Source of the DNA: Ranitomeya imitator | Lineage: Eukaryota | Length of the DNA stretch: 64,000 nucleotides | Assembly: GCF_032444005.1 (NCBI RefSeq) | Contig: NC_091290.1 | Location: 119,908,001 to 119,972,000, forward strand | Reading direction: 5' to 3' | Shown: one piece after another, positions 14,927 through 64,000 of the stretch | How the letters are laid out: each line of letters opens with the position of its first letter | Position numbering within the stretch: position 1 is the first letter of the stretch | The notes under the pieces: generated by a model | Told to the model about the DNA's origin: nothing | The model's input: the letters and a program-made list of their open reading frames with translations, nothing else | Database searches by the model: none | Position numbers and translations under genes: made by a program

Positions 14927-15660
14927 ACTTACTAAATCAACCACTACATTTTGACACTTCTACAATCGTTACTATTGGCAAGTATCCATCCTTTTAATTA
15001 TTTTTTTTTAATATAAATTAATAGTAAATGTGAAAATAAATTAATTTGTAATATATCTTATTAAAGAAATCGGTTTCTTTCTCCTCCAGGACTGATCATT
15101 CACTCTCCATTCATGGGTAAAATATCCAGTGTATACAAGCTTTTCCATTACAGAGATAGGAGAAGACAGTTGATGCTTATAAAAGTCTATGGAGGAGGGA
15201 GGAGCTAGAGGCGGAGACAAACATTCTGCTGCAAGTTCTCCTGAAATTACAGCTACACTTAAAAAAAAAAAATTACCAGCTGTCATCTTCGACCTCAGTA
15301 CAGGGAGTCTGGTCATTCACTGAAGACAGATTGTGCAGATTTATCTCTGAATTGAGAATAAAATATCAATTCAGGTCTAAAAGAAGCTGATTTCTATAAT
15401 AAGATATGCTTATTTTCATGGGTATAATTGATTTATAACAAAACATTCCTTTTTGAAGGGAAGCTGTCAGCATGATGTAGGGGCAGAGACACTGATTCCA
15501 GTGATGTCACTTACTGGACTCTTTGGTGCAGTTTTGATAAAATCCCTGGGTTTTTTTTCTTCTGCAGACCTTGGCACTCTCCACAAGGAGAGATGGTATT
15601 CCTTAGAGTCCCATCAGAGACCTCTCATCCAGCCAAATCAGATCTTTTTTTTTTTTTTTT

Positions 15661-15703
15661 TTGCACTGAAGAGGGGCAAACACCCCGAAACATGTGTCTG
15701 TAA
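15661..15703 (+). ncRNA. Minimal type-I hammerhead ribozyme at the head of a dispersed non-coding repeat
   Basis: UUGCA/UGUAA helix I (one GU), CUGAAGA, GGGG-CAAACA-CCCC, GAAA, C-AUGU-G, GUC (cut after 15698); downstream tail (TTTGGCTTTTATCCT...) recurs near 23050, 24930 and 36765. Confidence 0.75.
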
Positions 15704-15899
15704 CTAATCTCTGGTTTGGCTTTTATCCTGATTCATGTGGCAAGGCTTGATAAAGGGTTGATATTGACCTTTAGAGTTAATACTTCTAATAGGAGGCAAC
15801 AGAGTTTAGGTCCTCTGCCTAAGTTAAGTGGACGCACATGTTTTTACATTACCACTCCACTTCTATACAGGAAATATATATATCTTGGTACCGTGTTAG

Positions 15900-16445
15900 C
15901 CAGTAGATAGAAAAATATTTAGAATTGAGAGTCCTCAGTGGTTGATACCTTTTAATGGCTAACTGAAAAGATGGTAACAAATTGCAAGCTTTCGAGACTA
16001 CACAGGTCTCTTCATCAGGCAAAGACTAAAAGAAATTCTGAAGAATCACATATTTATGCACAACATAGCATAGAAAAAAAAACATGGATACGACAGGTGA
16101 CATGAAGCAGAATTGCCATGAGTGATAAATAGTTATGTCCATAAATATCGGACCAGTTCTTAGATAAGGAATGTTTTATTGTCCTCTGGGGTCTGGTTCT
16201 GTTGTGATGACCCCTCAGTCTGAGAGGCAAGTTCCTTAGTTGATGTAAAAAGACATAAATCCATGCGACACATTCATTCCTGCACTGAGACTGTCAAAGG
16301 TCGTCATCAGTTTATACTCCCATACTCTTCTGTCTCTCTTAGATTTGAAGCTACCTTTTAACACAAGTAATTTCATGTCCATAATGTTATGATTTGGGAG
16401 ACAAAAATGTATTGCCACAGGTAGATCCATTCTTTTTCTCTTATT
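15900..16445 (-). mobile_element. 5'-truncated Penelope-like retroelement (GIY-YIG endonuclease C-terminus plus 3' pLTR)
   Basis: ORF 16538-16236 ends RMDLPVAIHFCLPNHNIMDMKLLVLKGSFKSKRDRRVWEYKLMTTFDSLSAGMN, the PVAxHF...H...E..L...GxN signature of the PLE endonuclease tail; hammerhead lies about 215 nt past the stop. Ends approximate. Confidence 0.82.
15982..16022 (-). ncRNA. Minimal hammerhead ribozyme in a Penelope-like element pLTR
   Basis: Minus strand TTGC-CTGATGA-A-GAGAC-CTGTGTA-GTCTC-GAAA-GC-TT-GCAA: 4-bp helix I, 5-bp helix II, helix III reduced to the palindrome AAGCUU. Confidence 0.78.
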
Positions 16446-16788
16446 GACTCCACTTCTAGTGTATATGAGAAATGTCACGTCATAACATGTAGCAGCTACG
16501 GGTAGGAAACAGTCTAGGGACACTGAACGTCTCTGCACTTCTCATGGCAACAAGCATGCAAACAGAAACTGGCCATATGGGAATGGTCATGTACCAGGCA
16601 GAGGACAGTGCATTAGGATCTTGCATAGATCTTCTTGTAGGAGTTCTCGGGAAAAGGAAAATAAGGACATGTACAAGAATATACCTATCTGTCCTAATAA
16701 CTGCAGGAAGTCTTAGGCCTTATTCACACGAGTACAACCTGGAATTTAACCGCATTGCATGTTGCCAACTCTATGTCATATAGCAATA

Positions 16789-26500: not shown

Positions 26501-29500
26501 CAACTTCAGTTTTTTGTCTGCATACGAGGCCTGGACGGCGGTAACCGTTTCCTGCAATAAAAAGAAACATTGATCCATTGATAGTAATTGCTTACGCCGC
26601 AATATTCCTTCTTGGCAAGAACACAATATTTTACATATCTCTCCTGATCCCCCCATACATAGGCCGAACGCGCCTATCTTCCTTGTGGGAGACCTTACCC
26701 CTCTGAAAAAGGTTTGCTTTCATTTTTTGGCTATTGTATCCTGCCTGCTTATTCATTCATGGTCCCCAGGTATTTTTCTGCTCTGCTTATTGGTAATTGA
26801 CAACTGAAAGCCTCATTAACTGACATTACATCTTTCTGAGGGTGAACAATAAAGAGCAGGGAGATTCCTAGTACTCCGCTTGGAGGGTCCACACTGCAGC
26901 AAAAAAATTAACACAATCTAACTATAAAATGCAGCAATGGTCTCTCATTTAATTGTAGGATAAGGAAACATCATCTTATATGGATTTTTAAAGAAAAACG
27001 CGACGTGTGCACATACCCTTACATTAAATATTTTACAGTGTTACACTCATTACAACTGGAGAAAGAAATAGTTTTCTATAAGTCTCCTATCAGATGACTT
27101 GAGAGTCATCTTACGGGGTTCAGTCCTTGTACTCACCGTTTCAAAATATAAATCTGATGCAGAAGTGATGCTTATATGGACCGCGACAGAAGAGGTCACC
27201 ATCGTGCCCTTTGGTGTAATTTTAATTCCAGGGGCCGTGAGACTCCACACTTTTGCAGAGATTTCGTTAGCTGCATGATTGTGGAGGATCTAAGAGACAG
27301 AATTGTTGCTTAGCCAGAGACAGAATTGTGGCAGGGCACATATCTGGCCAAGGTTACAACAGAACTTGTGTAGTACTCATGGTTCCTAAGAGCACAGTGG
27401 CTTCCATAATCCTTAAATGGAAGAAGTTTGGGACCACCAGAAGTCTTCCTAGACCTGGCCGTCCAGCCAAACTGAGCAATCGTGGGAGAAGAGCCTTGGT
27501 GAAAGAGTTAAAGAAGAATCCCAAGATCACTGTGGCTGAGAAAGTTCCACAAAGTCAACTATCACTGCAGCCCTCCACCAGTCGGGCCTTTATGGCAGAG
27601 TGGCCCAACGTAAGCCTCTCCTCAGTGCAAGACATATGAAAGCCCGCATAGAGTTTGCTAAAAATCACATGAAGGACTCCCAGACTATTAGAAATAAGAT
27701 TCTCTGGTCTGACGAGACAAAGATAGACCTTTTTGGTGATAATTCTAAGCGGTATGTGTGGAGAAAACCAGGCACTGCTCATCACCTGCCCAATATAAAC
27801 CCAACAGTGAAACATGGTGGTGGCAGCATCGTGCTATGGGGGTGTTTTTCAGCTGCAGGGACAGGACGACTGGTTGTCATAGAAGGAAACATGAATGCGG
27901 TTCAGTACAGAGATATCTTGGATGAAAATCTCTTCCAGAGTGCTCTGGACCTCAGACTTGGCCGAAGGTTCACCTTCCAACAAGACAATGACCCTAAGCA
28001 CACAGCTAAAATAACAAAGGAGTGTCTTCAGAACAACTCTGTGACCATTCTTGACTGGTTCAGCCAGAGCCCTGACCTAAACCCAATTGAGCATCTCTGG
28101 AGAGACCTGAAAATGGCTGTCCACCAACAATCACCATCCAACCTGACGGAACTGGAGAGGATCTGCAAGGAAGAATGGCAGGGGATCCCCAAATCCAGGT
28201 GTGAAAAACTTGTTGCCTCATTCCCAAGTAGACTCGTGGCTGTACTAGCTCAAAAGGTGCTTCTACTCAATACTGAGCAAAGGGTCTGAATACTTATGAC
28301 CATGTGACATTTCAGTTTTTCTTTTTTAATAAATTAGCAAAAAGTTCTACATTTCAATTTTTTCAGTCAAGATGGGGTGCAGAGTGTACATTAATGAGAA
28401 AAAAGCAACTTTTTTTTTAATTTACCAAATGGCTGCAATGACACAAAGAGTGAAAAATATAAAGGGGTCTGAATACTTTCAGTACCCACTGTATACTTGT
28501 AGAAATAGGTATTGTGAATTATTGCGCATACTTATAGTTACCTCTCGTAGGATTTCCTGATGGGATGCCTCATTATCATTCTGAAGGATATCCTGAATAC
28601 AGAAAGGTTACAGGTTTCTGTTTAATAAGCCATAAAACTGCAGAAACAGTTTTGATTCATTTTTATGTAAATTTTAATTTAGTGGTGTCTTTCCATTTTT
28701 CTCACAGGAAGAGGATTGATGCACTGCCGAGGACGATGATCTTTTGGGCAAGGCAAAAGATCATTTCACCTGACGAACAAGCATTTTGGAAATAAGTAAG
28801 TAATAAAAAGCCATGGACACGTGGAAACTGACACATGGACCAAACATTGATAACAATTGGTCTTTACCAGAACAATACCAGAAAAATCACTGAAGTCTGA
28901 ATGAGGCCTTATAACGTTAGATCTATGAGTTTCATGAAAATCTCTGTATTTCTAGGCAGATGACTATTTTAGGAGTAAATGCTCTTCAAATTTACCTTTA
29001 ACTCTTCGCCGGAAAGATTCAGTGTCAAATGCTGATTGAGAAAATATGCCAGCATTAGAGAATCCAGGACCTGCTCTGAAAACCAGAAGTAGAGCATCCT
29101 ATCGTGCTTTAGAAGCGAAGGGGAGAAGATGGAGTCATTGTAGGAAACTGTGAGATTCTTGTAGGCCAGAAAACCCTAAGGAAGAGAGGGAAGAATATTT
29201 CTTATGTCATTGAATTGTCTAGCTTTAAAAAAGTACAGTTTTATGGATTTTTTTTTAATTGTTGCTTCTCCGCTGATTCTGGAACAGTTTTACTTTTTCT
29301 TCTGTGTTCCTCCATTCAGTAATAATAAAGGTGCACATTTAATTGTGGGTGTAGCCATGTTTTGATTGGCCAGTTTCAGAGGAGAAAAAGCATCTTCGTG
29401 GGCCTACCATGTTTTGATTGGCCAGTGTCAAAGGAAAAAAGCATCTTTGTGGGCATAGCCATGTTTTGATTGGCCAGTGTCAGAGGAGAAAAAGCATCTT

Positions 29501-35500: not shown

Positions 35501-38500
35501 TGGCTCTCCACACTTCAACCGCAAGTGTGTAAATTGGCAAGAATGAGCGTGAGTATCTGGTGCCTCCAAGACCCCCATAGACGCTGAAGACTAAACAAGT
35601 CGCAAGAATTTGGCAAATGATTTTCTGCTTTCCAGTGTTGTAGAAAGCAAAGTTGGTCATCTAAGTAGTATAAGAAGATGTGCGGGAGTGCCGCATCGGC
35701 CTCATCCCTGGTCCTCTGAGGAGTGGTCAGAATCAGCCCCATATGGAGGATGCTGAATGGGAGATGCTCATGGCAAAGACCTTCTGTGGGACGATGGAGG
35801 CTGAATGTTCCAGAACATACAGGAATTTAGGGAGGGCTATCATTTTAATGACATTGATTCTTCCAGCTATTGACAGAGGGAGGGCTCCCCATATTCGGAT
35901 TTCCACCCTCAGGTTTGGAAAAAAAAGGGGATATATTTAAATCACGAAGTTGAGTCTTTTTTTCATGTTTATATCTTAATATTTAAAGTGTGATAGTATC
36001 CGTAACCTGCAGAATTCATCCCCTACTTCCCATCCCATGGGGCTTAGAAGTGACAACATGGATTTTTGACAGTTTATGTTTAGACAGGAGAACCGGAAAA
36101 ATTCATCAATCAGATCCATTACCAGGGCAGCGTAACTCTTAGACTGGCCATAAACGGGATCCCAAGCGGTCTTCATGGGAACCCACTTTATCCCTTGTTA
36201 TCCTGCAATCTGACAGATCCTGGCCGCTAGTGGATCCATAGGTATCAGATTATGTTTAGCGAGAAAAATTAAAACTGAGCAGAAAAGTAAAAAAGGATAA
36301 AGGCAAGAATTGTATTCCTCACCTGACCTTTAAGCACAAGCTTTAAGGTGAATGAAATTAAATCTGTAAATAGTTGCTTAAACCATCCAGGCCTGCAAAA
36401 TAAAAAAATATATATATTTCTAAGAATAACAAAGTATTTTATATATGTTTTTAATAGAAATTTGATAACATCTTTGTATCTTACTGCTTGTCTCCATGAA
36501 GGTGTAAAATCAGTTCATGAAACGACAGGTAGCAGTCAGAAGTATCAGCAGCAATGCGGTTATTTCCACAAGCTGTAAAATACAAGGTCTGAAATGTAGT
36601 GCAAAATATAGTAATGCAACAGACAAAAACTGTAGAATATACGGTAATATAATAATATTATTATTATTATTATTATCAGCCACTATACAAAACTACAAAG
36701 CACTGATTAACCAATCAAAGGGCTGCCACATTCGTCACCGTGTCTGCAAACTGAGATTCTCTTTTGGCTTTTATCCTAAGTCATATTGCAAGGCTCGTTA
36801 AAGAAGCGATATTGACTTTTAGGATCGCTGCTTTCAACAGGTGTCGCTAGAGTTCTAGTTCTCTTCCTCTCTGAGTTTGCAAATTTTCCCACCTACAAAG
36901 AATGGAGAGGTCTGTCATTTTTGCAACTGTGAGAGACAGAATCTTACAAAAATCCAGAAAATCACATTGTATGATTTTTACATAATTAATTTGCATTTTA
37001 TTGCATGAAATAAGTTTTTGATACAATAGAAAAACAGAACTTAATATTTGGCACAGAAACCTTGGTTTGCAGTTACAAAGGTCAGACGTTTCCTGTAGTT
37101 CTTGACCAGGTTTGCACACACTGCAGAAGGGATTTTGGCCCCCTCCTCCATAAAGATCATCTTCAGATCTTTCAGCTTTCGGGGCTGTCGCTGAGCAACA
37201 TTGATTTTCAGCTCCCTCCAAAGATTTTCTACTTTGTTCACGTCTGGAAACTTACTAGGCCTCTCCAAGACCTTGAAATGTGTCTTACGGAGCTGTTCCT
37301 TAGTTGCCCTGGCTATCTGTTTTGGGTCATTGTCATGCTGGAAGACCCAGCCACAACCCATCTTCAATGCTCGTACTGAGGGAAGGAGGTTGTTTGCCAA
37401 AATCTCGCAATACATGACCACATCCTCCCTTCAATACAGTGCAGTCGTCCTGTCCCGTTTGCATAAAAGCACCCCCAAAGTATGATGTTTCCCCCACCAT
37501 GCTTCACAGTTGGGATGGTGTTCTGGGAGTTGTACTCATCTTTCTTCTTCCTCCAAGCACAGCAAGTGGTGTTGATACCAAAAAGTTCTATTTTGGTCTC
37601 ATCTGACCACATGATCTTTTCCCTTGCCTCCAATGGATCATCGAGATGGTTATTGGCAAACTTTTAACGGGCTTGGACATGTGCTGGTGTGAGCAGGGGG
37701 ACCTTGTGTGACCTGCAGGATTTTAATACATGATGGCGTAGTGTGTTACTAACATTTCTGTTTGAGACTGTGGTCCCAGCTCTCTTCAGGTCATTGACCA
37801 GGTCCTCCCGTGTAGTTCTGGGCTGATTCCTGAGCTTTCTCAGAATTATCCTTACCCCACCCCTCCCCCAGACGAGACCTTGCATAGAGCCCCAGACCTA
37901 GGAAGATTGACAGTCATCTCGTGTTTCTTCCAATAGTTGTGCTAATAGTTATGGTCTTCTCACGATGCTGCTTTCCTGTTGTCCTGTAGCCCATCGCAGC
38001 CTTGTGCAAGTCTACAATTTTGTCCCTGGTGTCCTTAGACGGCTCTTTGGTCTTGGCCATGGTGGAGAGGTTGGAATGTGTGGACAGGTGTCTTTCATAC
38101 AGCAGCTGTCCTGTAGCCCATCGCAGCCTTGTGCAAGTCTACAATTTTGTCCCTGGTGTCCTTAGACGGCTCTTTGGTCTTGGCCATGGTGGAGAGGTTG
38201 GAATGTGTGGACAGGTGTCTTTCATACAGGTGACGAGTACAAACGGATTCAATTAATACAGGTAATGAGTGCAGAGTAGTAGGACTTCTTAACAAAGAAC
38301 TAACAGGTCTGAGAGAGCCAGAATCCTTGCTGGTTGGTAGGTTATCAAATACTTATGCAATAAAATGCAGATTAATTACCGTATGTAAAAATCATACAAT
38401 GTGATTTTCTTTTCTTTTTTTACTATTAGATTCTGTCTCTAACAGATAAAAATTACAGACCTCGCCATTCTTTGTAGGTGGAAAAACTTGCAAAATCGGC

Positions 38501-46501: not shown

Positions 46502-49500
46502 TTTAAATCACCATTTCAAGTTTTCTGCTAATTACATTTCAGTGCACAGGGGCCAGATTGTGCATTGGGTTTTCTCCTCCTTTCTGTCATTCCCCGCCCC
46601 TCCGCCTTCGTCTGTGCTCAGCAGGTCACGGCTAAGATTTCAAACAGAGGCCGCAAATCATTCAAAGACAGGAAGCAGGCGGAGGGGGGCGGGGAATCAC
46701 AGACCGGAGGCAGGCGGAGGGGGGCGGAGAATCACAGACCGGAGGCAGGCAGAAGGGGGCGGGGAATCACAGACAGGAGGCAGGCGGAGGGGGGCGGAGA
46801 ATCACAGACAGGAGGCAGGCAGAAGGGGGCGGGGAATCACAGACAGGAGGCAGGCAGAAGGGGGCGGGGAATCACAGACAGGAGGCAGGCAGAGGGGGCG
46901 GGGAATCACAGACAGGAGGCAGGCAGAGGGGGCGGGGAATCACAGACAGGAGGCAGGCAGAGGGGGCGGGGAATCACAGACAGGAGGCAGGCAGAAGGGG
47001 GCGGGGAATCACAGACAGGAGGCAGGCGGAGGGGGGCGGAGAATCACAGACAGGAGGCAGGCAGAAGGGGGCGGGGAATCACAGACAGGAGGCAGGCAGA
47101 AGGGGGCGGGGAATCACAGACAGGAGGCAGGCAGAGGGGGCGGGGAATCACAGACAGGAGGCAGGCAGAGGGGGCGGGGAATCACAGACAGGAGGCAGGC
47201 AGAGGGGGCGGGGAATCACAGACAGGAGGCAGGCAGAAGGGGGCGGGGAATCACAGACAGGAGGCAGGCGGAGGGGGGCGGGGAATCACAGACAGGAGGC
47301 AGGCGGAGGGGGGCGGAGAATCACAGACAGGAGGCAGGCAGAGGGGGCGGGGAATCACAGACAGGAGGCAGGCAGAGGGGGGGCGGGGAATCACAGACAG
47401 GAGGCAGGCAGAGGGGGCGGGGAATCAGACAGGAGGCAGGCAGAGGGGGGCGGGGAATCACAGACACGAGGCAGGCGGAGGGGGCCGAGGAATCAGACAG
47501 GAGGCAGGCGGAGGGGACCGTGGAATCACAGACTGGAGGCAGGCGGAGGGGACCGTGGAATCACAGACTGGAGGCAGGCGGAGGGGACCGTGGAATCACA
47601 GACTGGAGGCAGGCGGAGGGGACCGTCGAATCACAGAATGGAGGCAGAGGGGCTGGGGAATCACAGACAGGAGGCAGCCGGAGGGGGGCGGGGAATCACA
47701 GACAGGAGGCAGGCAGAGGGGGTTGGGGAATCACAGACAGGAGGCAGCCGGAGGGGGGCAGGGAATCACAGACAGGAGGCAGCCGGAGAGGGGTGGGGAA
47801 TCACAGACCGGAGGCAGGCGGAGGGCGACGTGGAATCACAGACCGGAGGCAGGCGGAGGGCGACGTGGAATCACAGACAGGAGGCAGCCGGGGGGGTGGG
47901 GATTCACAGACAGGAAGCAGGGAGGGGGGGGGGGTGGAGAATCACATATAGGAGGCAGGCGGAGGGGGCGGGGAATTAGACAGGAGGCAGGCGGAGGGGG
48001 CGGGGAATCACAGACAGGAGGCAGGCAGAGGGGGCGGGGAATTAGGAGGCAGGCGGAGGGGCGGGGAATCACAGACAGAAGGCGAATCAGACACGAGGCA
48101 GGTGGAGGCAGGCGGAGAATCACAGACAGGAAGCAGGTGGAAGGAGGCAGTGAATCACAGATAGGAGACAGATGGAGGGGGTGGGGAATCACAGATAGGA
48201 GGCAGGCGGAGGGGGCGGAGAAGCACAGACACGAGGCAGGCGGAGGGGGCCGAGGAATCACAGACAGGAGGCAGGCGGAGGGGACCGGGGAATCACAGAA
48301 TGGAGGCAGGCGGAGGGGACCGTTGAATCACAGAACGGAGGCTGACAGAGGGGCCGGGGAATCACAGACAGGAGGCAGGCAGAGGGGGCGGGGAATCATA
48401 GACAGGAGGCAGGCAGAGGGGGGTGGGGAATCAGACAGGAGGCAGCTGGAGGGGGCGGAGAATCATAGACAGGAGGCAGGCAGAGGGGGCCAGGGAATCA
48501 CAGACAGGAGGCAGGCAGAGGGGGCGGGGAATCAGACAGGAGGCAGGCAGAGGGGGGCGGGGAATCACAGACAGGAGGCAGGCAGAGGGGGCGGGGAATC
48601 CCAGACAGAAGGCAGAGGGGGGCGGGGAGTCACAAACAGGAGGCAGGCAGAGGGGCGGGGAATCAGACAGGAGGCAGCTGGAGGGGGCAGGGAATCACAG
48701 ATAGGAGGCAGGCAGAGGGGGTGAGGAGGCAGGCAGAGGGGGCGGGGAATCACAGAAAGGAGGCAGGCGTAGGGGGTGGGGAATCACAGACAGGAGGCAG
48801 AGGGGCAGGGAATCAGACAGGAGGCATCCGGAGAGGGGCGGGGAATCACAGACAGAAGGCAGAGGGGGGGCGGGGAGTCACAAACAGGAGGCAGGCAGAG
48901 GGGCGGGGAATCAGACAGGAGGCATCCGGAGAGGGGCGGGGAATCACAGATAGGAGGCAGGCAGAGGGGGCGGGGAATCACAGACAGGAGGCAGGCAGAG
49001 GGGGGCGGGGAATTAGACAGGAGGCAGGCGGAGGGGGCGGGGAATCACAGACAGGAGGCAGGCAGAGGGGGCGGGGAATTAGGAGGCAGGCGGAGGGGCG
49101 GGGAATCACAGACAGAAGGCGAATCAGACACGAGGCAGGTGGAGGCAGGCGGAGAATCACAGACAGGAAGCAGGTGGAAGGAGGCAGTGAATCACAGATA
49201 GGAGACAGATGGAGGGGGTGGGGAATCACAGATAGGAGGCAGGCGGAGGGGGCGGAGAAGCACAGACACGAGGCAGGCGGAGGGGGCCGAGGAATCACAG
49301 ACAGGAGGCAGGCGGAGGGGACCGGGGAATCACAGAATGGAGGCAGGCGGAGGGGACCGTTGAATCACAGAACGGAGGCTGACAGAGGGGCCGGGGAATC
49401 ACAGACAGGAGGCAGGCAGAGGGGGCGGGGAATCATAGACAGGAGGCAGGCAGAGGGGGGTGGGGAATCAGACAGGAGGCAGCTGGAGGGGGCGGAGAAT

Positions 49501-52140
49501 CATAGACAGGAGGCAGGCAGAGGGGGCCAGGGAATCACAGACAGGAGGCAGGCAGAGGGGGCGGGGAATCAGACAGGAGGCAGGCAGAGGGGGGCGGGGA
49601 ATCACAGACAGGAGGCAGGCAGAGGGGGCGGGGAATCCCAGACAGAAGGCAGAGGGGGGCGGGGAGTCACAAACAGGAGGCAGGCAGAGGGGCGGGGAAT
49701 CAGACAGGAGGCAGCTGGAGGGGGCAGGGAATCACAGATAGGAGGCAGGCAGAGGGGGTGAGGAGGCAGGCAGAGGGGGCGGGGAATCACAGAAAGGAGG
49801 CAGGCGTAGGGGGTGGGGAATCACAGACAGGAGGCAGAGGGGCAGGGAATCAGACAGGAGGCATCCGGAGAGGGGCGGGGAATCACAGACAGAAGGCAGA
49901 GGGGGGGCGGGGAGTCACAAACAGGAGGCAGGCAGAGGGGCGGGGAATCAGACAGGAGGCATCCGGAGAGGGGCGGGGAATCACAGATAGGAGGCAGGCA
50001 GAGGGGGCGGGGAATCACAGACAGGAGGCAGGCAGAGGGGGGCGGGGAATTAGACAGGAGGCAGGCGGAGGGGGCGGGGAATCACAGACAGGAGGCAGGC
50101 AGAGGGGGCGGGGAATTAGGAGGCAGGCGGAGGGGCGGGGAATCACAGACAGAAGGCGAATCAGACACGAGGCAGGTGGAGGCAGGCGGAGAATCACAGA
50201 CAGGAAGCAGGTGGAAGGAGGCAGTGAATCACAGATAGGAGACAGATGGAGGGGGTGGGGAATCACAGATAGGAGGCAGGCGGAGGGGGCGGAGAAGCAC
50301 AGACACGAGGCAGGCGGAGGGGGCCGAGGAATCACAGACAGGAGGCAGGCGGAGGGGACCGGGGAATCACAGAATGGAGGCAGGCGGAGGGGACCGTTGA
50401 ATCACAGAACGGAGGCTGACAGAGGGGCCGGGGAATCACAGACAGGAGGCAGGCAGAGGGGGCGGGGAATCATAGACAGGAGGCAGGCAGAGGGGGGTGG
50501 GGAATCAGACAGGAGGCAGCTGGAGGGGGCGGAGAATCATAGACAGGAGGCAGGCAGAGGGGGCCAGGGAATCACAGACAGGAGGCAGGCAGAGGGGGCG
50601 GGGAATCAGACAGGAGGCAGGCAGAGGGGGGCGGGGAATCACAGACAGGAGGCAGGCAGAGGGGGCGGGGAATCCCAGACAGAAGGCAGAGGGGGGCGGG
50701 GAGTCACAAACAGGAGGCAGGCAGAGGGGCGGGGAATCAGACAGGAGGCAGCTGGAGGGGGCAGGGAATCACAGATAGGAGGCAGGCAGAGGGGGTGAGG
50801 AGGCAGGCAGAGGGGGCGGGGAATCACAGAAAGGAGGCAGGCGTAGGGGGTGGGGAATCACAGACAGGAGGCAGAGGGGCAGGGAATCAGACAGGAGGCA
50901 TCCGGAGAGGGGCGGGGAATCACAGACAGAAGGCAGAGGGGGGGCGGGGAGTCACAAACAGGAGGCAGGCAGAGGGGCGGGGAATCAGACAGGAGGCATC
51001 CGGAGAGGGGCGGGGAATCACAGATAGGAGGCAGGCAGAGGGGGCGGGGAATCACAGACAGGAGGCAGGCAGAGGGGGGCGGGGAATTAGACAGGAGGCA
51101 GCTGGAGAATCACATATAGGAGGCAGGCAGAGGGGGCGGGGAATTACACAGGAGGCAGGCAGAGGGGGGGTGGGGAATCAGACAGGAGGCAGGTGGAGGG
51201 GCAGAGGAATCACAGAAAGGAGGCAGGCAGAGGGGGCAGAGGAATCACAGAAAGGAGGCAGGCAGAGGGGGGCGGGGAATCAGACAGAAGGCAGCTGGAG
51301 GGGGGGCAAGGAATCACAGATAGGAGGCAGGCAGGGGGGGTGAGGAGGCAGGCAGAGGGGGCGGGGAATCACAGAGAGGAGGCAGGCGGAGGGGGCGGGG
51401 AATCACAGACAGGAGGCAGGCAGAGGGGCGGGGAATCAGACAGGAGGCAGCTAGAGGGGGGCGGGGAATCACAGATAGGAGGCAGGCAGAGGGGGCGGGG
51501 AATCAGACAGGAGGCATCCGGAGAGGGGCGGGGAATCACAGATAGGAGGCAGGCAGAGGGGCAGGGAATCAGACAGGAGGCAGCTAGAGGGGGGCGGGGA
51601 ATCACAGATAGGAGGCAGGCAGAGGGGGCGGGGAATCAGACAGGAGGCATCCGGAGAGGGGCGGGGAATCACAGATAGGAGGCAGGCAGAGGGGCAGGGA
51701 ATCAGACAGGAGGCATCCGGAGAGGGGCGGGGAATCACAGATAGGAGGCAGGCAGAGGGGGCGGGGAATCAGACAGGAGGCATCCGGAGAGGGGCGGGGA
51801 ATCACAGATAGGAGGCAGGCAGAGGGGCGAGGAATCAGACAGGAGGCAGCTGGAGGGGGGCGGGGAAATCACAGATAGGAGGCAGGCAGAGGGGCAGGGA
51901 ATCAGACAGGAGGCATCCGGAGAGGGGCGGGGAATCACGGATAGGAGGCAGGCAGAGGGGGCGGGGAATCACTGACAGGAGCAGACAAAGAAAGCTGGGG
52001 AAATCACAGAACGCAGGCAGGCGGAAATCACAGCCAGGAGCAGGCCGAGGAATCACAGACAGGGATGAGAAGATCCAGTGTACGGTCCGGCCCCTCTGCA
52101 CCGAAATCCAATTAGCAGAAAGCTTGAGATGGTGATTAAA
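46502..52140. mobile_element. Foldback/MITE-like element with ~100-bp terminal inverted repeats enclosing a satellite
   Basis: 46502-46606 aligns to the reverse complement of about 52044-52140 (TTTA(A)ATCACCATYTCAAGYTTTCTGCTAATT...GTGCASAGGGGCC), roughly 75-80% identical by eye. Confidence 0.7.
46670..52060 (+). repeat. 5.4-kb purine/G-rich minisatellite (30-35 bp unit GGGGAATCACAGACAGGAGGCAGGCAGAGGGGGC) with a 1037-bp higher-order repeat
   Basis: Unit directly visible, about 160 copies; the variant marker AATTAGACAG recurs at 47974, 49011, 50048 and 51085. Confidence 0.95.
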
Positions 52141-53639: not shown

Positions 53640-54305
53640 GCTCCGCAGCCAACCGAGCTCATGGCAAGACTGGCCGGTATGCTAGACTGGTTATGGCAGC
53701 CGACCGAGCTCATGGCAAGACTGGCCAGTATGCCAGATGGGTTATGGCAGCCCACCGAGCTCATGGCAAAGACTGGCCAGTATGCTAGATGGGTTACGGC
53801 AGCCGGCCGAGCTCAAGGCAAGACTGGCCAGTATGCTAGATGGGTTACGACAGCTGACCGATCTCATGGCAAGACTGGCCAGTATACTAGACTGGTTACA
53901 GCAGCCGACCAAGCTTATGGCAAGACTGGCCAGTATGCTAGACTGGTTACGGCAGCCGACCGAGCTCATGGCAAGACTGGCCAGTATGCTAGACTGGTTA
54001 CGGCAGCCGACTGAGCTCAAGGCAACACTGGCCAGTATGCTAGATGGGTTACGACAGCTGACCGATCTCATGGCAAGACTGGCCAGTATACTAGACTGGT
54101 TACAGCAGCCGACCAAGCTTATGGCAAGACTGGCCAGTATACTAGACTGGTTACGGCAGCCGACCAAGCTCATGGCAAGACTGGCCAGTATGCTAGATGG
54201 GTTACGGCAGCTGAACGAGCTCATGGCAAGACTGGCCAGTAATCTAGATGGTTACGGCAGCCGACCAAGCTCAGGGCAAGACTGGCCGGTATGCTAGATG
54301 GGTTA
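53640..54305 (+). repeat. 51-bp minisatellite x13, probably in the HERPUD1 3' UTR
   Basis: Unit GGCAGCCGACCGAGCTCATGGCAAGACTGGCCAGTATGCTAGACTGGTTAC; a variant block recurs at 204-bp spacing (53811/54015). Confidence 0.95.
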
Positions 54306-54583
54306 CCGTTTGTAAACCTTAACACTACAATTAGTGTAAATTATGCAGATATTCCACAAGGAATCAAATGACATGAGCAGAGTGGGGAAAGGGGTTCTGC
54401 TCAGATTTATAGTTGCGTACACCTCTTTGGACTTGTATAAAAAGTAAGAAATCCATCTCAGATCGTCTTCCCCGAAACACTACGAAGCATCGGTCCCTTG
54501 ATCAGGCCAACGCTCGCCACGTAGAAGGTGGAAGACTAGAAGCATGCGGCTCGAAGTCCGAACGTCCATTATTGATTCTAACA

Positions 54584-57500
54584 TCACTGAACCGCGGCTG
54601 GAGGGCCTTCAGGAATCAAAGAGGCAAAAAAAGTTTTGAAAAACACCCAAGCAGTAAATACATATGAATTTGGAGGAAGAGGAGCGGCCGCGGGCTCGTT
54701 GACCACATCTTCTCTGGTGGGTTCGTTTTCCTGCAGAGAAAGAAGGCTATGGTAATCATCTACTTATCTAACAAACTATATATAATCAGAACTGAACAGG
54801 GCGCAGAAAGTAATGGGTTAATTTAAAGTAGCCCCATGACTACTGCAACCAGTTCGTAGACTCATGCCGTACTACTGGCATCACCGCAAGAATCAGCAGT
54901 GGCCAGTTCGGGGGAGCCGCCAGGGTCTCTTCACTGGATTGACAAGTATAGATTTTACACCTTGTCACGGCGGGATTGCTGCTATGCTTTTTTGATAGGA
55001 AAAGGTTTAACCAAGTACTATATACATATGCTGCTCGCTTACATTAGGGTTCATGCTCATTTTCTTTTTAGCTTACGTTTTGTTTTGTCTTTTAAATGGC
55101 CACAGTGTGAACATGCTCTTACACATTGCATTTATACCAACTTATACTCCGCCTCATTTATTTGGTCTTGCTGTAGTTTCTTGCACTTTGTACAAACAGG
55201 GGGCATGGATCCCCCTTCTGAGTTAGGCATTTCATCTATACAGCTTCCCATGGGCAGGTGTCTGAGCAGTCAGGCCCTGGTCCTGCTCTGCCCCCATCTA
55301 CACTGAAAAGGCACAGATGATTGGCCTCGGGGAGACCAAAACATTCAACACCGCGGAGACACCATCACGTGTTTCTCAACGAAGTGATTCCAGAACACTG
55401 CCCCCATCCCTTATGGGAAATATGCAGATGCATGAAAAGAAGCTGCAGAGACACCATCACATGTTTCTCGACGCAAGCAGTGAATAGCCAGGCCTTTCCC
55501 CGGGAAGGAACAACCACGGGAAGGGCAGCATCCTATGAAGGAAAGCCACCTATGCCAAGCATGGTATCCATCCACAGACAGCTGTTTCGGGCATATTTCC
55601 CATAAGGGATGGGGGCAGTGTTCTGGAATCACTGCGTTGAGAAACACGTGATGGTGTCTCCGCGGTGTTGGATGTTTTGGTCTCCCCGAGGCCAATCATC
55701 TGTGCCTTTATAGCCTTTTTACTAGGCACTGCTCCTAATAGCCAGATTCCTACTCCACACTGATGAGGGGCAAAACCCCGAAACAGCTGTCTGTGGATGG
55801 ATACCATGCTTGGCATAGGTGGCTATCCTTCATAGGATGCTGCCCTTCCCGTGGTTGTTCCTTCCCGGGGAAAGGCCTGGCTATTCACTGCTTGCGTCGA
55901 GAAACACGTGATGGTGTCTCCGCAGCTTCTTTTCATGCATCCATCTACACTGAAGTCGGCTGACACATAGAAAGGTTTAATACTAGAGGATAGGACCATC
56001 CCGATTGGGTACACTAGGTGGGATGGCTTTTTAGTTTTTTTTTTTTTTATAGCAAAGTAGTGTTAACCAAGAGCCCTGCTATTTACATGTGCTATTACTA
56101 ATCATTTACTATAGGGTATATGCTCATTTTGTTCTATCTTAGGTTTACATGTTTTAGGGAAAAAAAAAATTATGCAAGCAAAAATTAAAAATTGGAGAAG
56201 CAATTGTCCAAAGCAACAAGTTTCCAGCTTTAATTTTTAAGAAATCTTTTGAAAACTGAAAGGCAAGTATTCTACTCGTGCCTTATCCTAATGGGTTGGG
56301 AGATGCGAGTAGGGAAAGTGACTCAAAAATGTATAAGCCACTAGACAAGTCTACACCTAAGGAGCTTACCTGCAAGTTGTTGTTTGGATCTTGGTGGTTT
56401 GGGACAGGTTGTTGGACAGGGGCCGCAACTTCCTGTGGGGGTCTCTGTCTGAAGGGAAACAATCCTGCTGTGTGTCTAAAATAAAAGAATGAAATACACT
56501 TTAATCTGAGCTCTGCAGGTCCCATTAATAGATTATGGGTCTCATTTTTTGCCGTGATCGGTCACTGCTGTATAAAATAATTCTTACCCCTTCATCCAGA
56601 AGAGGATTGTGAGGTCAGACATGGAAATTGGGGGAGGCCGGGGTCACAATCACTGTTCTAGCTCATCACCAAACATGTTGGATGGGACCGAGGTCCGGGC
56701 TTTGTGAAACCGCTCATGTTCTTCCCACCAAACTCCCCCAATCCTGGACCTTGTGCTCCTAGGCACATATCTTGGTAACAGAAAATGACCTTTCCTAAAT
56801 GGTTACTACAAATCCAAAATATTTTGTGCTGAAATATTAAGATTTCCCTTCACTAGAACAATTGGACCGAGGCCGACCCCCCAAAACATCCCCTTAGCTA
56901 AATCCCTCTTCCACCAAAGTCCAGGCATTCTCCAAGACCAGACATGTGATTTGTTCCTGCACATAGTTCAATGCTGGCAGCTTTACACCACTCGCTCCAA
57001 TTGTCAGCATTGTGCTTGGTGGTGTAAGGCTGCATGCAGCTTCTAGGCCGTGGAATCCAAGTGCGATCTGCTGCTACACAGAGCAAAAATGAAAGCTACA
57101 GTCCGCTACCGATTCGTTGAAAAATTCACCCCTACTGATGTGAACACAGCCCAAGCCTCTACTCTTCCTAGCCGATTTCCATATAGGATACTCACAGGTA
57201 CATCAGGATCATGGCGCCCAGGACCATCATGAATCGGCTCAGGCTGGAGTAGAAGTAGAGGATACTGAGGAATATGGAAAAGCGTGCGGCTGTGTACACC
57301 CAGTCCAACCAGTCTCTGTTGAAGTCGTCTTCTTCCTCCACCAGGCCTCCTTGAGCATTCATCCGCAGGTTTGGATTAGCTACTGGATTAACTGCAGCGG
57401 GAGCTTCTGGATTGGGAGCCTGGTTGGCAGCAGGGAAAGGATGGGGCAAAGGGTCCGGAGCAGCAGGTGGCACAACTGGTAGCTCCTGTCTTCTCTGGGA

Positions 57501-60217
57501 AGGAGGACTGGTGGCCGTAGCAGCGGCGGCAGCATAGCTATAGGGCAAGGACAAAAAGTTACAAAAAAAGCACAAGTAATCTCACAAAAGTAAACTTAAA
57601 GCAATTAACCCCCTCTCCCACCTTGGGCAAAAACCCCAATTATAAAGCAAACTACCGCATGGATGCCACCATCAGATATACAGGTACTTACTACTGCATA
57701 TAGTACTGTCTGGCGTACATCTGCTGCAGCCATATGATCTGCTGCGGGCTGTACACCGAGAACGGGGAGAAAGAAGAAGCATTTACGTCTTCAGAGCTTT
57801 AAAGAAAAGAGAAGTTGATATTAATCTCTAATAAGACGTAGCAGTAATCTGAGCAATAATCTGCGTCACCGGTATGTGTCATAAGTACCCGGGTGTGTCT
57901 ATTTGTGCCGCGGGAGAACTCTGTGGGACGATCCGCTGTCTGATGCCGTCCGCCGGAGGAGCGGAGGGGCTGGGTGAGCCATGCCCCTCCGTGCCCGCTG
58001 TAGGCTGCTGTTTGCTTTCCTGAGTCTGAAAGCAATTAAGGTAATTAGCGAAAAAGTCCAGTGACATTAGGGGATTTTACACTAACAACTAGTGCAACCT
58101 ATTAGGCAAATCTGGATCTTTGTCCCAAGCAAAGCCGAACGGCACTAAACAGAATTTAAGCGTGGCCGTCATTTCACAATAAGCTGTAACAATCATTCTG
58201 GCTATTATAGGACTTGTATCCTGCCGTTTGTCCGGGGCTAGAGAGTGGAATTTAGCTGCTATAATGTCTTCTATACAGAGCACATAGACATCTGCTCTCC
58301 TGTGTGTATATAGCACAGTACAGATAGCATAATACACAAGGACTGAACTGTGTAGCTGTGAATCCCCGCACCGCGTAGCTGCCAATCCTCGCCACCGCAC
58401 AGCTGCCAGTCCCCGCCACCGCACAGCTGCCATTACCCGCCACCGCGTAAGCTGAAAAATCCCACATTGTGTAAGCTGCAAATCCCCCACTGTGTAAGCT
58501 GCAAATCCCACACTGTGTAGCTGTGAATCCTGCACTGAAGAAGACACTTGGTAGAATTTGCAGCGCGGTCTTCCTCCCCCTCCGTATAGTTCAGTTGACC
58601 ATCGCACGTGTCACCCCATCCTCAGGGTTCTGGGATTACACTGTGCCATTGGGTTGATATGCACCTGGGTATCTAATAAGGTGCTTAGAACTGCACTACG
58701 TTTTACAGAATGAAGGATTTAAGAAATAAATAAGAATAATCACATTACCTGGTTGTGCACAGCACTTCTAATGGAGCAGACAAGGTGCAATACATGCCGG
58801 ACTTCCTGCAAACCAAAAACAAACAGGACTACATGAACAGCGCCTGATTGAATGAAGTGGCGCCGACAGCAACGCCCGGGCAGCAGATCTTTACCTTGGA
58901 CAGGACCTCATCCAGCTTCAGATGGTCGGGAAGGAGCTTTCCCGAATAGATCAGGCGCTGTTCTTGTTCCATCTGCAGATCGAAAAAAAAAAAAAGAACA
59001 GATGTCAGTTTTGTACCAGCGACGAAGTGTAACTTACAGCACAGGAGGGGCACGGATCTCCGGGAGCTTGTGTAGCTAAGCCGGCAGATTCCCTACTATG
59101 AGGGGCTCTGATCCAAAAATTCATAAGGCGAAGGTTTCACATTGCCCAGGGCTGATCCTCATGGGGTGCTCCCAGTCTGTGTCATGTAGACTCCTGGCAT
59201 CATGGCTGCCATCGCTGATCAGTGTCGCCAACAGTACAGCATGTGACCAAGACGGGGGGCGACAGGGTCAGCAACATGCACATGTATTTACAAAGTTGCC
59301 AAATGTTAGATCCATAGACATGAAGAAACCGAAGATCTGTGGCTTATAGGCTCTGAAGACTGATTTGGGGGATTTCCTGAAAGAAAGTCCGGCAGCCATA
59401 TGTCGCCCTATTGCCCCGTGCATGGATGATCACAATACCGGGGGCATTTGGCTCTCTTCACCATCACCTAACAGGACAAACTGATGATCGGGCAATGACG
59501 TGGCTTCTGTGTGTTACATAGCCGGCACCAGATGCCACCCATGTAGCTCAAACCCCCATAGCCGGCACCAGATGCCCCCTAGCTAGCTCAGACCCCCATA
59601 GCCGGCATCAGATGCCCCCCAGCTAGCTCAGACCTTCATAGCCAGCACGAGATTCCACCCAGCTAGCTCAGACCTTCATAGCCAGCACCAGATGCCACCC
59701 AGCTAGCTCAGACCCCCATAGCCGGCACCAGATGCCCCCCAGCTAGCTCAGACCCCCATAGCCGGCACCAGATGCCCCCCAGCTAGCTCAGACCCCCATA
59801 GCCAGCACCAGATGCCCCCCAGCTAGCTCAGACCCCCATAGCTGGCACCAGATGCCACCCAGCTAGTACAGACCCCCATAGCCGGCACCAGATGCCACCC
59901 AGCTAGCTCAGACCCCCATAACCGGCACCAGATGCCCCCCAGCTAGCTCAGACCCCCATAGCCAGCACCAGATGCCCCCCAGCTAGCTCAGATCCCCATA
60001 GCTGGCACCAGATGCCACCCTGCTAGCTCAGACCCCCATAGCCGGCACCAGATGCCCCCCAGCTAGCTCAGACCCCCAAAAGCTAACACCCTAAATGCCA
60101 TGGAATACAGTGACAGTGACATTTAAAGGGACCCCATTTGGTGCTGATCTGTCGCCTATTGGAGCCCACTCCCAGCGTCCGCCATGTTACTGCAATAGTA
60201 CAAGGAACCAATTAAAA

Positions 60218-63219: not shown

Positions 63220-64000
63220 GACTCGGCCATTGGGGAATATTCCACTTGGGTCAATGTTCTGTCCTGTGATGCTCAGTCCAATCAACCTTGTTGCATTTGG
63301 TTGAATCTGAGCAAAGTATCGTCCTGTATGCTTCAGAATTCATCCGGCTGCTTCTGTTTTCAGTCACATCATCAATAATCACTAGTGACTCGGTGCCATT
63401 GGAAGCCATGCATGTCCGCACCATCATATGGCCTCCACTATGCTTCACAGGGGATGTGCTGTTCTTTGGATCGTGAGCCATTCCAAGCCTTCTCTGTACT
63501 ATTTTCTAAACATCATTCTGGCACAGGTTGATCATCGTTTCATCTGTCCATAGAATGGTTTTCCAGAACTGGACGGCTTTTGTTTTTGGCAAACTCTAAT
63601 CTGGCACTAATTTTAAGGCTGATTAAAGGTTTGTACCTTGTAGTGACCCCTCTGTATTTGCGCTCATGAAGTCTCTTTATGTTAGACTTAGATAGTGAAA
63701 CACCTACTTCCTGGAGAGTGTCCTTTACTTGGGGGGGATGTTGTGGAGGGATGTTCTTCACCAGGGAAAGGATTCTGTGATCATCCACCACTGTTGTATT
63801 CCATGGAGGTCCAGGCCTTTTTAAGTTCTTCTTTCTTTTTGCAGTACGTACCAAACTGATGAGTTGCCCACTCCTAATATTTCTGCTATTTCTGTGATGG
63901 ATTGCTCCTTTTTTTCTAGCCTAATGATGATTTGTTTCTCTTCCATTGAGAGCTCTTTTGACAGCATGTTGTGGGTTCACAGCAACAGCTTCCAAATGCA
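63220..64000 (-). mobile_element. Tc1 transposase fossil, continues past the window end
   Basis: ORF fragments VKHSGGHMMV..CMASNGT, RKYRGVTTRYKPLISLK..RLEFAK and a decayed W(T)DET motif. Confidence 0.82.

What the first reader, a model, noticed from the sequence alone, without database searches (positions are those of the whole stretch)
55294..55954. Retrozyme-like hammerhead element inserted as a single TSD-bounded event in HERPUD1 intron 7
A 633-bp non-coding insert is flanked by a perfect 14-bp TSD and contains a textbook minimal type-I hammerhead (6-bp helix I, CUGAUGA, 4-bp helix II, GAAA, palindromic CAGCUG, GUC). The forward part (A'-spacer-B', about 350 nt) is preceded by an inverted part that reads B' then A' on the other strand. 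This shows that the end of the unit joins its own start, as expected for a tandem or circular ~350-nt template. That fits the non-LTR retrozyme model (ribozyme-processed circular RNAs mobilised by Penelope-like machinery), and a PLE fragment occurs in the same window. The specific family may be undescribed.
Basis: partly seen in the sequence, partly recalled or inferred. Interest (0 to 1): 0.85.

Follow-up and report, generated by a model that had tools for sequence, protein, structure and literature searches.

The report
Hammerhead retrozyme copy in frog intron
A 633-bp insert in the last intron of the poison frog HERPUD1 gene is a dead copy of a small non-coding mobile element that carries a hammerhead ribozyme; this kind is already known from amphibians, but the layout of this copy shows how it was pasted in.

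Summary
A perfect 14-bp duplication (55294-55307 and 55941-55954) brackets a 633-bp insert. The insert is an inverted partial copy that reads B' then A', followed by one forward unit A'-spacer-B'. The arms are 98% identical. The forward unit carries a complete type-I hammerhead (55754-55797, cut site 55791/55792). That motif matches Rfam RF00163 over its full length but below threshold. Two copies co-fold into a double hammerhead.

The window comes from the frog Ranitomeya imitator. The insert lies antisense in the last HERPUD1 intron.

The best reading is one insertion of a ~352-nt non-coding hammerhead retroelement of the non-LTR retrozyme type, which depends on Penelope-like elements (PLEs). 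Both ends of a staggered DNA break primed reverse transcription on sense RNA. That explains the inverted-plus-forward layout, which is a published PLE hallmark. The forward copy is almost exactly one unit long, and the inverted copy crosses the unit's end-to-start junction. Both facts fit a tandem or circular template, but a linear leader RNA plus a template jump fits as well.

I could not test copy number, tandem arrays, circular RNA or cleavage. No coding PLE was found in the window. This is a new member of a known kind and of modest interest.

The parts
55294..55307 (.). Left copy of the 14-bp target-site duplication CCATCTACACTGAA.
   Evidence: It is 14/14 identical to 55941-55954, and the next bases outward differ.
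55308..55425 (-). Inverted copy of unit positions 1-118/119 (A'). It includes an inverted copy of the 31-nt hairpin motif (55353-55381).
   Evidence: It is 98% complementary to 55591-55709, with 2 mismatches.
55426..55426 (-). Single junction base between the end of B' and the start of A' in the inverted copy. Read on the minus strand the junction is ...CATGCAT-C-T-GCATATT...
   Evidence: This is the only place where the end of the unit is seen joined to its start.
55427..55590 (-). Inverted copy of unit positions 187-351 (B'). It starts inside the 3' strand of hammerhead helix II, so it holds only the 3' half of the ribozyme. It lacks the 67-nt spacer.
   Evidence: It is 98% complementary to 55777-55941, with 3 mismatches, 2 of them CpG to TpG.
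55591..55940 (+). Forward copy: one almost exact full unit (350 of ~352 nt), made of A' 55591-55709, spacer 55710-55776 and B' 55777-55940.
   Evidence: The circular fold of the unit is -129.7 kcal/mol against -108.8 +/- 5.2 for shuffles (z = -4.0, 0 of 200).
55754..55797 (+). Type-I hammerhead ribozyme. The predicted cleavage and ligation site lies between 55791 and 55792. Helix I can be extended by 55748-55750 pairing with 55799-55801 across a UAC/U internal loop.
   Evidence: descriptor. Rfam RF00163, model positions 1-45 of 45, 20.0 bits, E = 0.006 in an 81-nt search; the dimer MFE is the double hammerhead at -36.3 kcal/mol, and the monomer MFE is a non-ribozyme fold..
55633..55663 (+). 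First copy of a 31-nt hairpin motif (TGCGTTGAGAAACACGTGATGGTGTCTCCGC). It lies 46 nt upstream of the unit position at which the inverted copy begins.
   Evidence: It is 97% identical to the second copy while the flanking sequence is unrelated. Both copies fold as the same stem-loop.
55893..55923 (+). Second copy of the 31-nt hairpin motif. It lies 17 nt upstream of the 3' end of the forward copy. I infer it could be an RT recognition or initiation signal; this is not tested.
   Evidence: The analogy is to the stem-loop where RT initiates in the Anolis PLE (PMC11167929).
55763..55939 (+). A 59-codon open frame starting at the AUG inside CUGAUGA. This is the position of the ORF start in the Anolis PLE, but the frame is not significantly open and has no homologues.
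   Evidence: 14% of shuffles are equally open; only spurious repeat proteins among 1.84 billion representatives.
55941..55954 (.). Right copy of the 14-bp target-site duplication.

Best explanation
The insert is one retrotransposition event of a ~352-nt non-coding element that carries a hammerhead. The element is of the metazoan non-LTR retrozyme type, which is thought to derive from Penelope-like elements (PLEs) and to be moved by their RT-endonuclease.

**Shown by the sequence**
- A 14-bp staggered break was filled in, giving a perfect TSD.
- The right part is a sense copy of one unit. Its 3' end lies 149 nt downstream of the ribozyme cut site.
- The left part is an antisense copy. It starts at unit position 119, runs through position 1, crosses directly (plus one base) to position 351, and stops at 187 inside the GC-rich helix II.
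- There is no poly(A) tail and there are no terminal inverted repeats.

**Inferred mechanism**
- Both 3'-OH ends of the break primed cDNA synthesis on sense RNA (twin priming), as the Anolis PLE enzyme does in vitro.
- The bottom strand started at an internal RT start site (position ~351) and copied one unit.
- The top strand started at position 119 and copied across the unit junction.
- The two cDNAs were joined at 55590/55591.
- The template therefore had end joined to start, as in a multi-unit transcript of a tandem array or a ribozyme-processed, ligated circle. A forward copy of just one unit is what a single round on a circle would give.

**What this copy can do now**
- It is a dead-end monomer. 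It has one complete ribozyme, and that ribozyme's helix III is only 2 bp plus a palindromic loop, so it should need a second copy to cleave.
- It lies antisense to HERPUD1, so the host pre-mRNA carries no sense ribozyme.
- Arm divergence of 1.8% suggests an age of roughly 2-9 million years at 1-3 x 10^-9 substitutions per site per year.
For: **Anatomy**
- TSD, arms and junction.
- Ribozyme core and helices. Three motifs in the window against none in 200 simulations.
- Full-length sub-threshold match to Rfam RF00163, whose consensus has the same loop-free palindromic helix III.

**RNA folding**
- Two copies fold into the double hammerhead with an 8-bp intermolecular helix III, at -36.3 kcal/mol against 2 x -15.4 for the monomers. 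The monomer MFE disrupts the catalytic core.
- The unit RNA is unusually stable (z = -4.0).

**No coding capacity**
- No significant coding potential and no protein homologues.

**Related ribozymes elsewhere**
- Twelve distinct metagenome hammerheads with the same core and helix II have a 6-bp helix I that covaries and different palindromes in helix III.

**Host and location**
- The host is Ranitomeya imitator.

**Literature**
- Amphibian retrozyme units are 330-350 nt, carry dimer-dependent type-I hammerheads and have TSDs longer than 4 bp (PMC7229834).
- Vertebrate retrozymes are related to PLE pLTRs, and all seven amphibians sampled carry them (10.64898/2026.07.22.740005).
- PLE insertions often carry an adjacent inverted 5'-truncated copy (PMC8557442).
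- PLE RT initiates internally, downstream of the hammerhead, at a site not homologous to the target. The enzyme nicks and extends both strands, and ribozyme cleavage is not needed for insertion (PMC11167929).
Against: - Only one locus was seen. No other copy of the unit exists in the 64-kb window, in 41 metagenome loci or in the protein libraries. Family status, tandem arrays and circular RNA are therefore untested.
- The locus fails the working definition of an active retrozyme, which needs at least 2 tandem units with complete hammerheads. TRF finds no array here.
- The unit's GC content of 51.7% is above the <45-50% reported for metazoan retrozymes.
- The target is not AT-rich (43% AT), unlike the preference reported for the Anolis PLE.
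- Neither insert end coincides with the ribozyme cut site, so ribozyme processing of the template is not required by the data.
- The Rfam score is below the gathering threshold.
- No RT or GIY-YIG coding sequence could be confirmed in the window.
Confidence: 0.6

Rival explanations
1. This is a leader-only copy of an autonomous Penelope-like element, not a separate non-autonomous family. On this reading position 1 is the transcription start in the pLTR and position ~351 is the internal RT start site just inside the ORF. The forward copy is a full cDNA of that 5' leader. The junction in the inverted copy arose when the second RT reached the RNA 5' end, added one untemplated base, and jumped to the RT start site of the same or another RNA. 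No tandem or circular 352-nt template is needed.
For: - In the Anolis PLE the ORF starts in the hammerhead, the cut site is 26 nt after the start codon, and RT starts 111-118 nt into the ORF. Here an AUG lies inside CUGAUGA, the cut site is 29 nt after it, the frame stays open to the insert end, and the 3' end is 178 nt after it.
- One extra base sits at the junction.
- The inverted-plus-forward layout is a PLE hallmark.
- Most PLE insertions are heavily 5'-truncated and retain a single terminal repeat.
- RepeatMasker reported about 60,000 Penelope fragments in this species (that paper is marked retracted).
Against: - The open frame is not significant (14% of shuffles).
- The 59-aa product has no true homologue among 1.84 billion representatives.
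- The ribozyme has the canonical retrozyme-type build (6-bp helix I, 4-bp helix II, no bulge after A9). It is not the PLE 'min-HHR' with a long helix II and short helix I.
- The unit length matches amphibian retrozymes.
- In the junction the frame stops after 6 codons.
Confidence: 0.25
2. A retrozyme or satellite transcript was mobilised by a LINE reverse transcriptase (L1, L2 or CR1), with classic twin priming producing the inversion.
For: - The twin-priming geometry and a 14-bp TSD are typical of L1 (my own knowledge of L1 inversions).
- LINEs make up about 10% of this genome (retracted paper).
Against: - There is no poly(A) or A-rich tail and no microsatellite at the 3' end.
- The hammerhead link to PLEs and the shared distribution of PLEs and retrozymes point to PLEs.
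Confidence: 0.08
3. This was a DNA-level event: a fragment or extrachromosomal circle from a hammerhead satellite array was captured at a double-strand break, with a fold-back duplication. No reverse transcription was involved at this site.
For: - The unit junction is compatible with circular DNA excised from a tandem array.
- Satellite and transposon interplay is discussed for these repeats.
Against: - A perfect 14-bp TSD at both borders points to a staggered endonuclease cut that was filled in.
- The two segments have ordered, strand-specific start points, each downstream of a copy of the same 31-nt hairpin.
- There are no terminal inverted repeats, so this is not a MITE or DNA transposon.
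Confidence: 0.04

Closest known systems
Amphibian non-LTR retrozymes: axolotl Rtz330/Rtz353, newt satellite 2 and the Xenopus families (Cervera & de la Pena 2020, PMC7229834; Li, Clavereau & Pollet 2026, bioRxiv 10.64898/2026.07.22.740005)
   Same: - Non-coding unit of ~330-350 nt with one type-I hammerhead per unit.
- Weak helix III with a palindromic loop, so the ribozyme should act as a dimer.
- Highly self-paired RNA.
- TSD longer than 4 bp.
- The end of the unit is joined to its start.
- An amphibian host that also carries PLEs.
   Different: - Here there is a single unit plus an inverted partial copy, not a head-to-tail array.
- GC content is 52% rather than below 45-50%.
- By eye, the sequence outside the ribozyme is unrelated to the axolotl units.
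- An inverted companion copy is not mentioned for retrozymes in either paper.
Penelope-like element insertions (pLTR, 'tail' and adjacent inverted 5'-truncated copy; Craig et al. 2021, PMC8557442; Frangieh et al. 2024, PMC11167929)
   Same: - Inverted truncated copy directly upstream of a forward copy, inside one TSD.
- The hammerhead lies upstream of the 3' end.
- The 3' end lies ~150 nt beyond the cut site, as expected for internal RT initiation.
- There is no homology between the target and the RNA start site.
- An AUG lies inside CUGAUGA.
   Different: - There is no RT/GIY-YIG ORF.
- The unit closes on itself after 352 nt.
- The ribozyme is the canonical type-I build, not the PLE minimal variant.
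- The target is not AT-rich.
Rfam RF00163 Hammerhead_1 (type I)
   Same: - Full-length alignment to model positions 1-45.
- Complete catalytic core.
- 6-bp helix I and 4-bp helix II with a CAAA-rich loop.
- 8-nt palindromic helix III without a loop.
   Different: - The score is 20.0 bits, below the gathering score of 34.
- Helix II is GGGG/CCCC instead of GUCC/GGAC.
- The loop is one base shorter.
L1 twin-priming inversions
   Same: The 5' part is inverted relative to the 3' part within one TSD, explained by both ends of a staggered break priming on one RNA.
   Different: - There is no poly(A) tail.
- The template repeats itself, since the junction crosses unit end to start.
- The ribozyme-bearing RNA points to PLE rather than LINE machinery.

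Membership tests
Hammerhead ribozyme, type I (Rfam RF00163) | Complete conserved core: C3-U4-G5-A6-N7-G8-A9, G12-A13-A14, A15.1/U16.1 and H17 | tested here: met
   CTGATGA at 55760-55766, GAA at 55780-55782, A at 55783, T at 55790, C at 55791.
Hammerhead ribozyme, type I (Rfam RF00163) | Three helices with helix I open (type-I topology) | tested here: met
   6-bp helix I, 4-bp helix II, and a helix III of 2 bp plus an AGCU loop (8 bp in a dimer).
Hammerhead ribozyme, type I (Rfam RF00163) | Score at or above Rfam's gathering threshold | tested here: not met
   20.0 bits against 34. Nothing was reported in the whole-window or 851-nt searches.
Hammerhead ribozyme, type I (Rfam RF00163) | Loop 1 / loop 2 tertiary contact of canonical type-I motifs | tested here: inconclusive
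   A UAC/U internal loop closed by UCC/GGA (55748-55753 and 55798-55801) and a CAAAA loop 2 are present. Their likeness to the Schistosoma-type contact rests on my recollection only.
Hammerhead ribozyme, type I (Rfam RF00163) | Self-cleavage after H17 | not testable with these tools
   Needs in vitro transcription of monomer and dimer. Only 1 of 9 Xenopus dimers cleaved in Li et al..
Metazoan non-LTR retrozyme | Short non-coding unit (about 170-400 nt) with one type-I hammerhead | tested here: met
   The unit is ~352 nt. The longest sense ORF in a tandem context is 71 codons, it has no homologues, and the frame is not significantly open.
Metazoan non-LTR retrozyme | Head-to-tail tandem units, with at least 2 consecutive complete hammerheads for an 'active' retrozyme | tested here: not met
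   This locus has one complete ribozyme and no tandem array. A head-to-tail junction is present only inside the inverted partial copy. The rest of the genome could not be searched.
Metazoan non-LTR retrozyme | Expressed as linear and circular RNA of unit length | not testable with these tools
   No transcriptome access.
Metazoan non-LTR retrozyme | Highly self-paired RNA | tested here: met
   The circular MFE is -129.7 kcal/mol, with 68% of bases paired and z = -4.0 against 200 dinucleotide shuffles.
Metazoan non-LTR retrozyme | Low GC content (<45-50%) | tested here: not met
   The unit's GC content is 51.7%. This is a descriptive trait rather than a strict criterion.
Metazoan non-LTR retrozyme | TSD longer than the 4 bp of plant LTR retrozymes; no LTR, PBS or PPT | tested here: met
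   The TSD is 14 bp and the insert has no direct terminal repeats.
Penelope-like element (autonomous copy or its truncated insertion) | ORF with a telomerase-like RT and a GIY-YIG endonuclease | tested here: not met
   The insert has none. No YxDD motif with a clean context exists in the window. The candidate ORF 16236-16538 has no Pfam, PDB or homologue support.
Penelope-like element (autonomous copy or its truncated insertion) | Complex insertion: an inverted 5'-truncated copy adjacent to the forward copy | tested here: met
   compared with the description in PMC8557442.
Penelope-like element (autonomous copy or its truncated insertion) | 3' end set by internal RT initiation downstream of the hammerhead, with no homology to the target | tested here: inconclusive
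   The 3' end lies 149 nt past the cut site, with only 1 nt of microhomology at each border. This is consistent with PMC11167929, but it rests on a single copy.
Penelope-like element (autonomous copy or its truncated insertion) | Minimal hammerhead typical of metazoan PLE pLTRs (long helix II, short helix I, extra base after A9, no loop 3) | tested here: not met
   The ribozyme here is canonical. A true PLE-type motif does exist elsewhere in the window, at 15982-16022 on the minus strand.

The most novel reading that the evidence does not exclude
The locus is a molecular fossil of a circular hammerhead RNA being copied by PLE machinery. Two features together would show this: a PLE-specific insertion signature (both DNA ends primed, with an inverted copy next to the forward copy), and a forward cDNA that stops after exactly one turn of a ~352-nt circle while the second cDNA runs across the ligation-independent unit junction. 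If so, this would be the first structural evidence, from a single insertion, that retrozyme circles are templates for Penelope-like RT-endonucleases. It would also suggest that the duplicated 31-nt hairpin marks the two RT start sites.
Probability: 0.3. Interest if true: 0.55.

Novelty: new member of a known kind. Interest (0 to 1): 0.35.

Why it matters
Non-LTR retrozymes are inferred to be moved by Penelope-like elements mainly because the two co-occur and because retrozymes resemble PLE pLTRs. How they insert is still open.

A clean, TSD-bounded copy that shows the PLE-style inverted-plus-forward layout, a unit-length forward cDNA and a read-through of the unit junction is a small piece of direct structural evidence for that link. 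It also gives a concrete, testable family in a frog with a chromosome-level assembly.

For the host gene it is most likely neutral. The insert is antisense and intronic, and the pre-mRNA carries no sense ribozyme.

Tried and rejected
**Searches that found nothing useful**
- Rfam at the gathering threshold on the whole window, and at E<=10 on 851 nt, gave no hammerhead. The match appears only in an 81-nt search.
- I looked for other copies through spurious ORFs. The antisense 94-aa ORF had no candidates in the search for homologous proteins. The sense 59-aa ORF, searched against 1.84 billion representatives, gave only unrelated repeat proteins.
- A metagenome scan with the ribozyme core pattern returned 41 loci, but similarity stops at the ribozyme. 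It was useful only for comparing ribozyme architecture.
- The assembly that holds the window (GCA_032444005.1) was identified, but its DNA cannot be fetched.

**Checks on the PLE fragment said to be in the window**
- ORF 16236-16538 (-) looked GIY-YIG-like by eye, but it has no Pfam, PDB or homologue hit.
- No RT motif was found in the window.
- There is no inverted repeat around the second hammerhead and no informative repeats at 14.9-17.1 kb.

**Readings considered and rejected**
- MITE or DNA transposon: rejected, because the two insert termini are not inverted repeats of each other.
- Coding reading of B': rejected as unsupported.

- I did not align the unit to the axolotl Rtz330/Rtz353 units. 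They appear only as text in a supplement and have no reference id.
Full report
**1. What is there**

CCATCTACACTGAA occurs at 55294-55307 and again at 55941-55954. It sits exactly at the two borders of a 633-bp block, and the bases just outside the two copies differ.

The block has two parts:
- **Right part (55591-55940).** This is a forward unit made of A' (55591-55709), a 67-nt spacer (55710-55776) and B' (55777-55940).
- **Left part.** This is the reverse complement of A' (55307-55425) followed by the reverse complement of B' (55427-55591). Read on the minus strand it gives B', then one base, then A': ...CATGCAT-C-T-GCATATT...

The arms are 119 and 165 nt long and 98% complementary. They differ at five positions, two of them CpG to TpG.

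The forward copy begins at the same unit position that follows B' in the inverted copy. It ends at the position that precedes A' there. So the forward copy is 350 of about 352 nt of one unit.

The two insert termini are not inverted repeats of each other, and there is no A-rich tail.

**2. The ribozyme**

On the + strand, 55754-55797 holds a complete hammerhead:
- helix I TCCACA/TGTGGA
- CUGAUGA
- helix II GGGG/CCCC with loop CAAAA
- GAA
- the palindrome ACAGCUGU
- C17 at 55791

Evidence that the motif is real:
- My descriptor finds three such motifs in the window and none in 200 Markov simulations.
- Rfam gave nothing for the whole window or for 851 nt. In an 81-nt search RF00163 aligns over its full length at 20.0 bits, below the cut-off of 34. 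Its consensus has the same loop-free palindromic helix III.
- The monomer's best fold destroys the core. Two copies fold best as a double hammerhead with an 8-bp intermolecular helix III: -36.3 kcal/mol against 2 x -15.4.

With 6-bp and 4-bp helices I and II and a 2-bp helix III under a palindromic tetraloop, this is the 'canonical' metazoan type-I build described in PMC4209133. It resembles axolotl HHR_Amex2. It is not the 'minimal' PLE variant.

Twelve distinct metagenome hammerheads with the same core and helix II show the same build. Their helix I covaries and their helix III carries different palindromes.

**3. Context**

An intact sulfotransferase ORF in the window is identical to a gene on a 158-Mb contig of GCA_032444005.1. 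Two papers name that assembly as Ranitomeya imitator aRanImi1.

HERPUD exons lie on the minus strand:
- the UBL exon near 58.9 kb, which matches the PDB HERPUD2 and HERPUD1 UBL domains
- the transmembrane exon at 57192-57575
- an exon near 56.4 kb
- the last exon ending near 54.6 kb

The insert therefore lies in the last intron. That is consistent with 'intron 7' if the frog gene has eight exons. The ribozyme strand is antisense to the gene.

**4. Attempts to find relatives**

- No other copy of the unit exists in the window.
- The frog assembly cannot be read with these tools.
- Searches through spurious ORFs found nothing real.
- The metagenome loci share only the ribozyme.
- Copy number, tandem arrays and expression therefore remain untested.
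- The unit RNA is unusually stable as a circle (z = -4.0).
- The frame that opens at the AUG inside CUGAUGA runs to the insert end, but 14% of shuffles do the same.

**5. Mechanism**

The antisense left part must have been copied from sense RNA. The geometry is therefore twin priming:
- The bottom-strand end primed at unit position ~351 and copied down to position 1.
- The top-strand end primed at position 119, copied through 1 into 351, and stopped at 187 inside helix II.

The published biochemistry of an Anolis PLE fits this:
- The enzyme nicks and extends both strands.
- RT starts internally, downstream of the hammerhead.
- The start site has no homology to the target.
- Ribozyme cleavage is not needed for insertion.

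PLE insertions are described as often carrying an adjacent inverted 5'-truncated copy. Vertebrate retrozymes are reported to be relatives of PLE pLTRs and to be present in all sampled amphibians.

Each of the two start points lies downstream of a copy of the same 31-nt hairpin, by 46 and 17 nt. That this hairpin guides initiation is my inference.

**6. What remains open**

The junction and the one-unit forward copy fit a tandem transcript or a circle. They also fit a linear RNA running from a fixed 5' end to the RT start site, followed by a template jump with one untemplated base. That alternative would make this the leader of a coding PLE.

Evidence leaning to the retrozyme reading:
- the canonical ribozyme build
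- the unit length
- the lack of any coding signal

Evidence leaning the other way:
- the AUG-in-ribozyme layout
- the frequency of truncated PLE copies

The 'PLE fragment' in the window could not be confirmed as protein. There are, however, two further hammerheads:
- a canonical one at 15660-15704 (+), scoring 23.9 bits
- a PLE-type minimal one at 15982-16022 (-), with no Rfam hit

**7. Verdict**

This is a new member, possibly an undescribed family, of a known kind. Its main value is as a clean example of PLE-style insertion architecture in a retrozyme-like element.

Noticed in passing
window 15660-15704 (+): A second canonical type-I hammerhead (CTGAAGAGGGGCAAACACCCCGAAACATGTGTC). It has the same GGGG/CCCC helix II as the finding's ribozyme. 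It gives a full-length sub-threshold Rfam RF00163 match (23.9 bits) and is preceded by a run of 18 T. Its flanks are unrelated to the 352-nt unit, and there is no inverted companion copy.
   Followed up: partly
window 15982-16022 (-): A PLE-type minimal hammerhead: an extra A after CUGAUGA, a 5-bp helix II, an AGCU helix III and a 4-bp helix I. Rfam gives no hit. It lies about 210 nt downstream of ORF 16236-16538 (-). That ORF looked like the end of a GIY-YIG endonuclease by eye, but it has no Pfam, PDB or homologue support.
   Followed up: partly
window 46662-51981: A 5.3-kb GC-rich (65%) tandem array with a 35-bp period, strongly G- and A-skewed. It produces long false ORFs of up to 719 aa.
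   Followed up: no
window 13341-14492 (-): An intact single-exon carbohydrate sulfotransferase gene (Pfam Sulfotransfer_1). It is identical to a gene called in GCA_032444005.1, and this match identified the organism as Ranitomeya imitator.
   Followed up: yes
window 27328-28289 (+), 37041-37421 (-), 63540-63854 (-): Tc1/mariner transposase remnants. Pfam DDE_3 and HTH_Tnp_Tc3_2 hit the first one; the other two were recognised by eye only.
   Followed up: partly
window 55307-55941: In the HERPUD1 pre-mRNA the insert provides two alternative long double-stranded regions (119 bp or 165 bp, 98% paired). They cannot both form at once. These could be substrates for RNA editing or Dicer.
   Followed up: no
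L001:439-1089, L023:325-929, L033:171-794 (Trout Bog Lake metagenome contigs): Tandem hammerheads 580-626 nt apart, with a 6-bp helix I and a palindromic ACCGGT or ACTAGT helix III. These are retrozyme-like tandem repeats from an unknown freshwater organism.
   Followed up: partly
window 53645-54306 and 59517-60078: Tandem arrays with 51-bp and 40-bp periods next to or within the HERPUD gene region. The first lies just downstream of the last exon.
   Followed up: no
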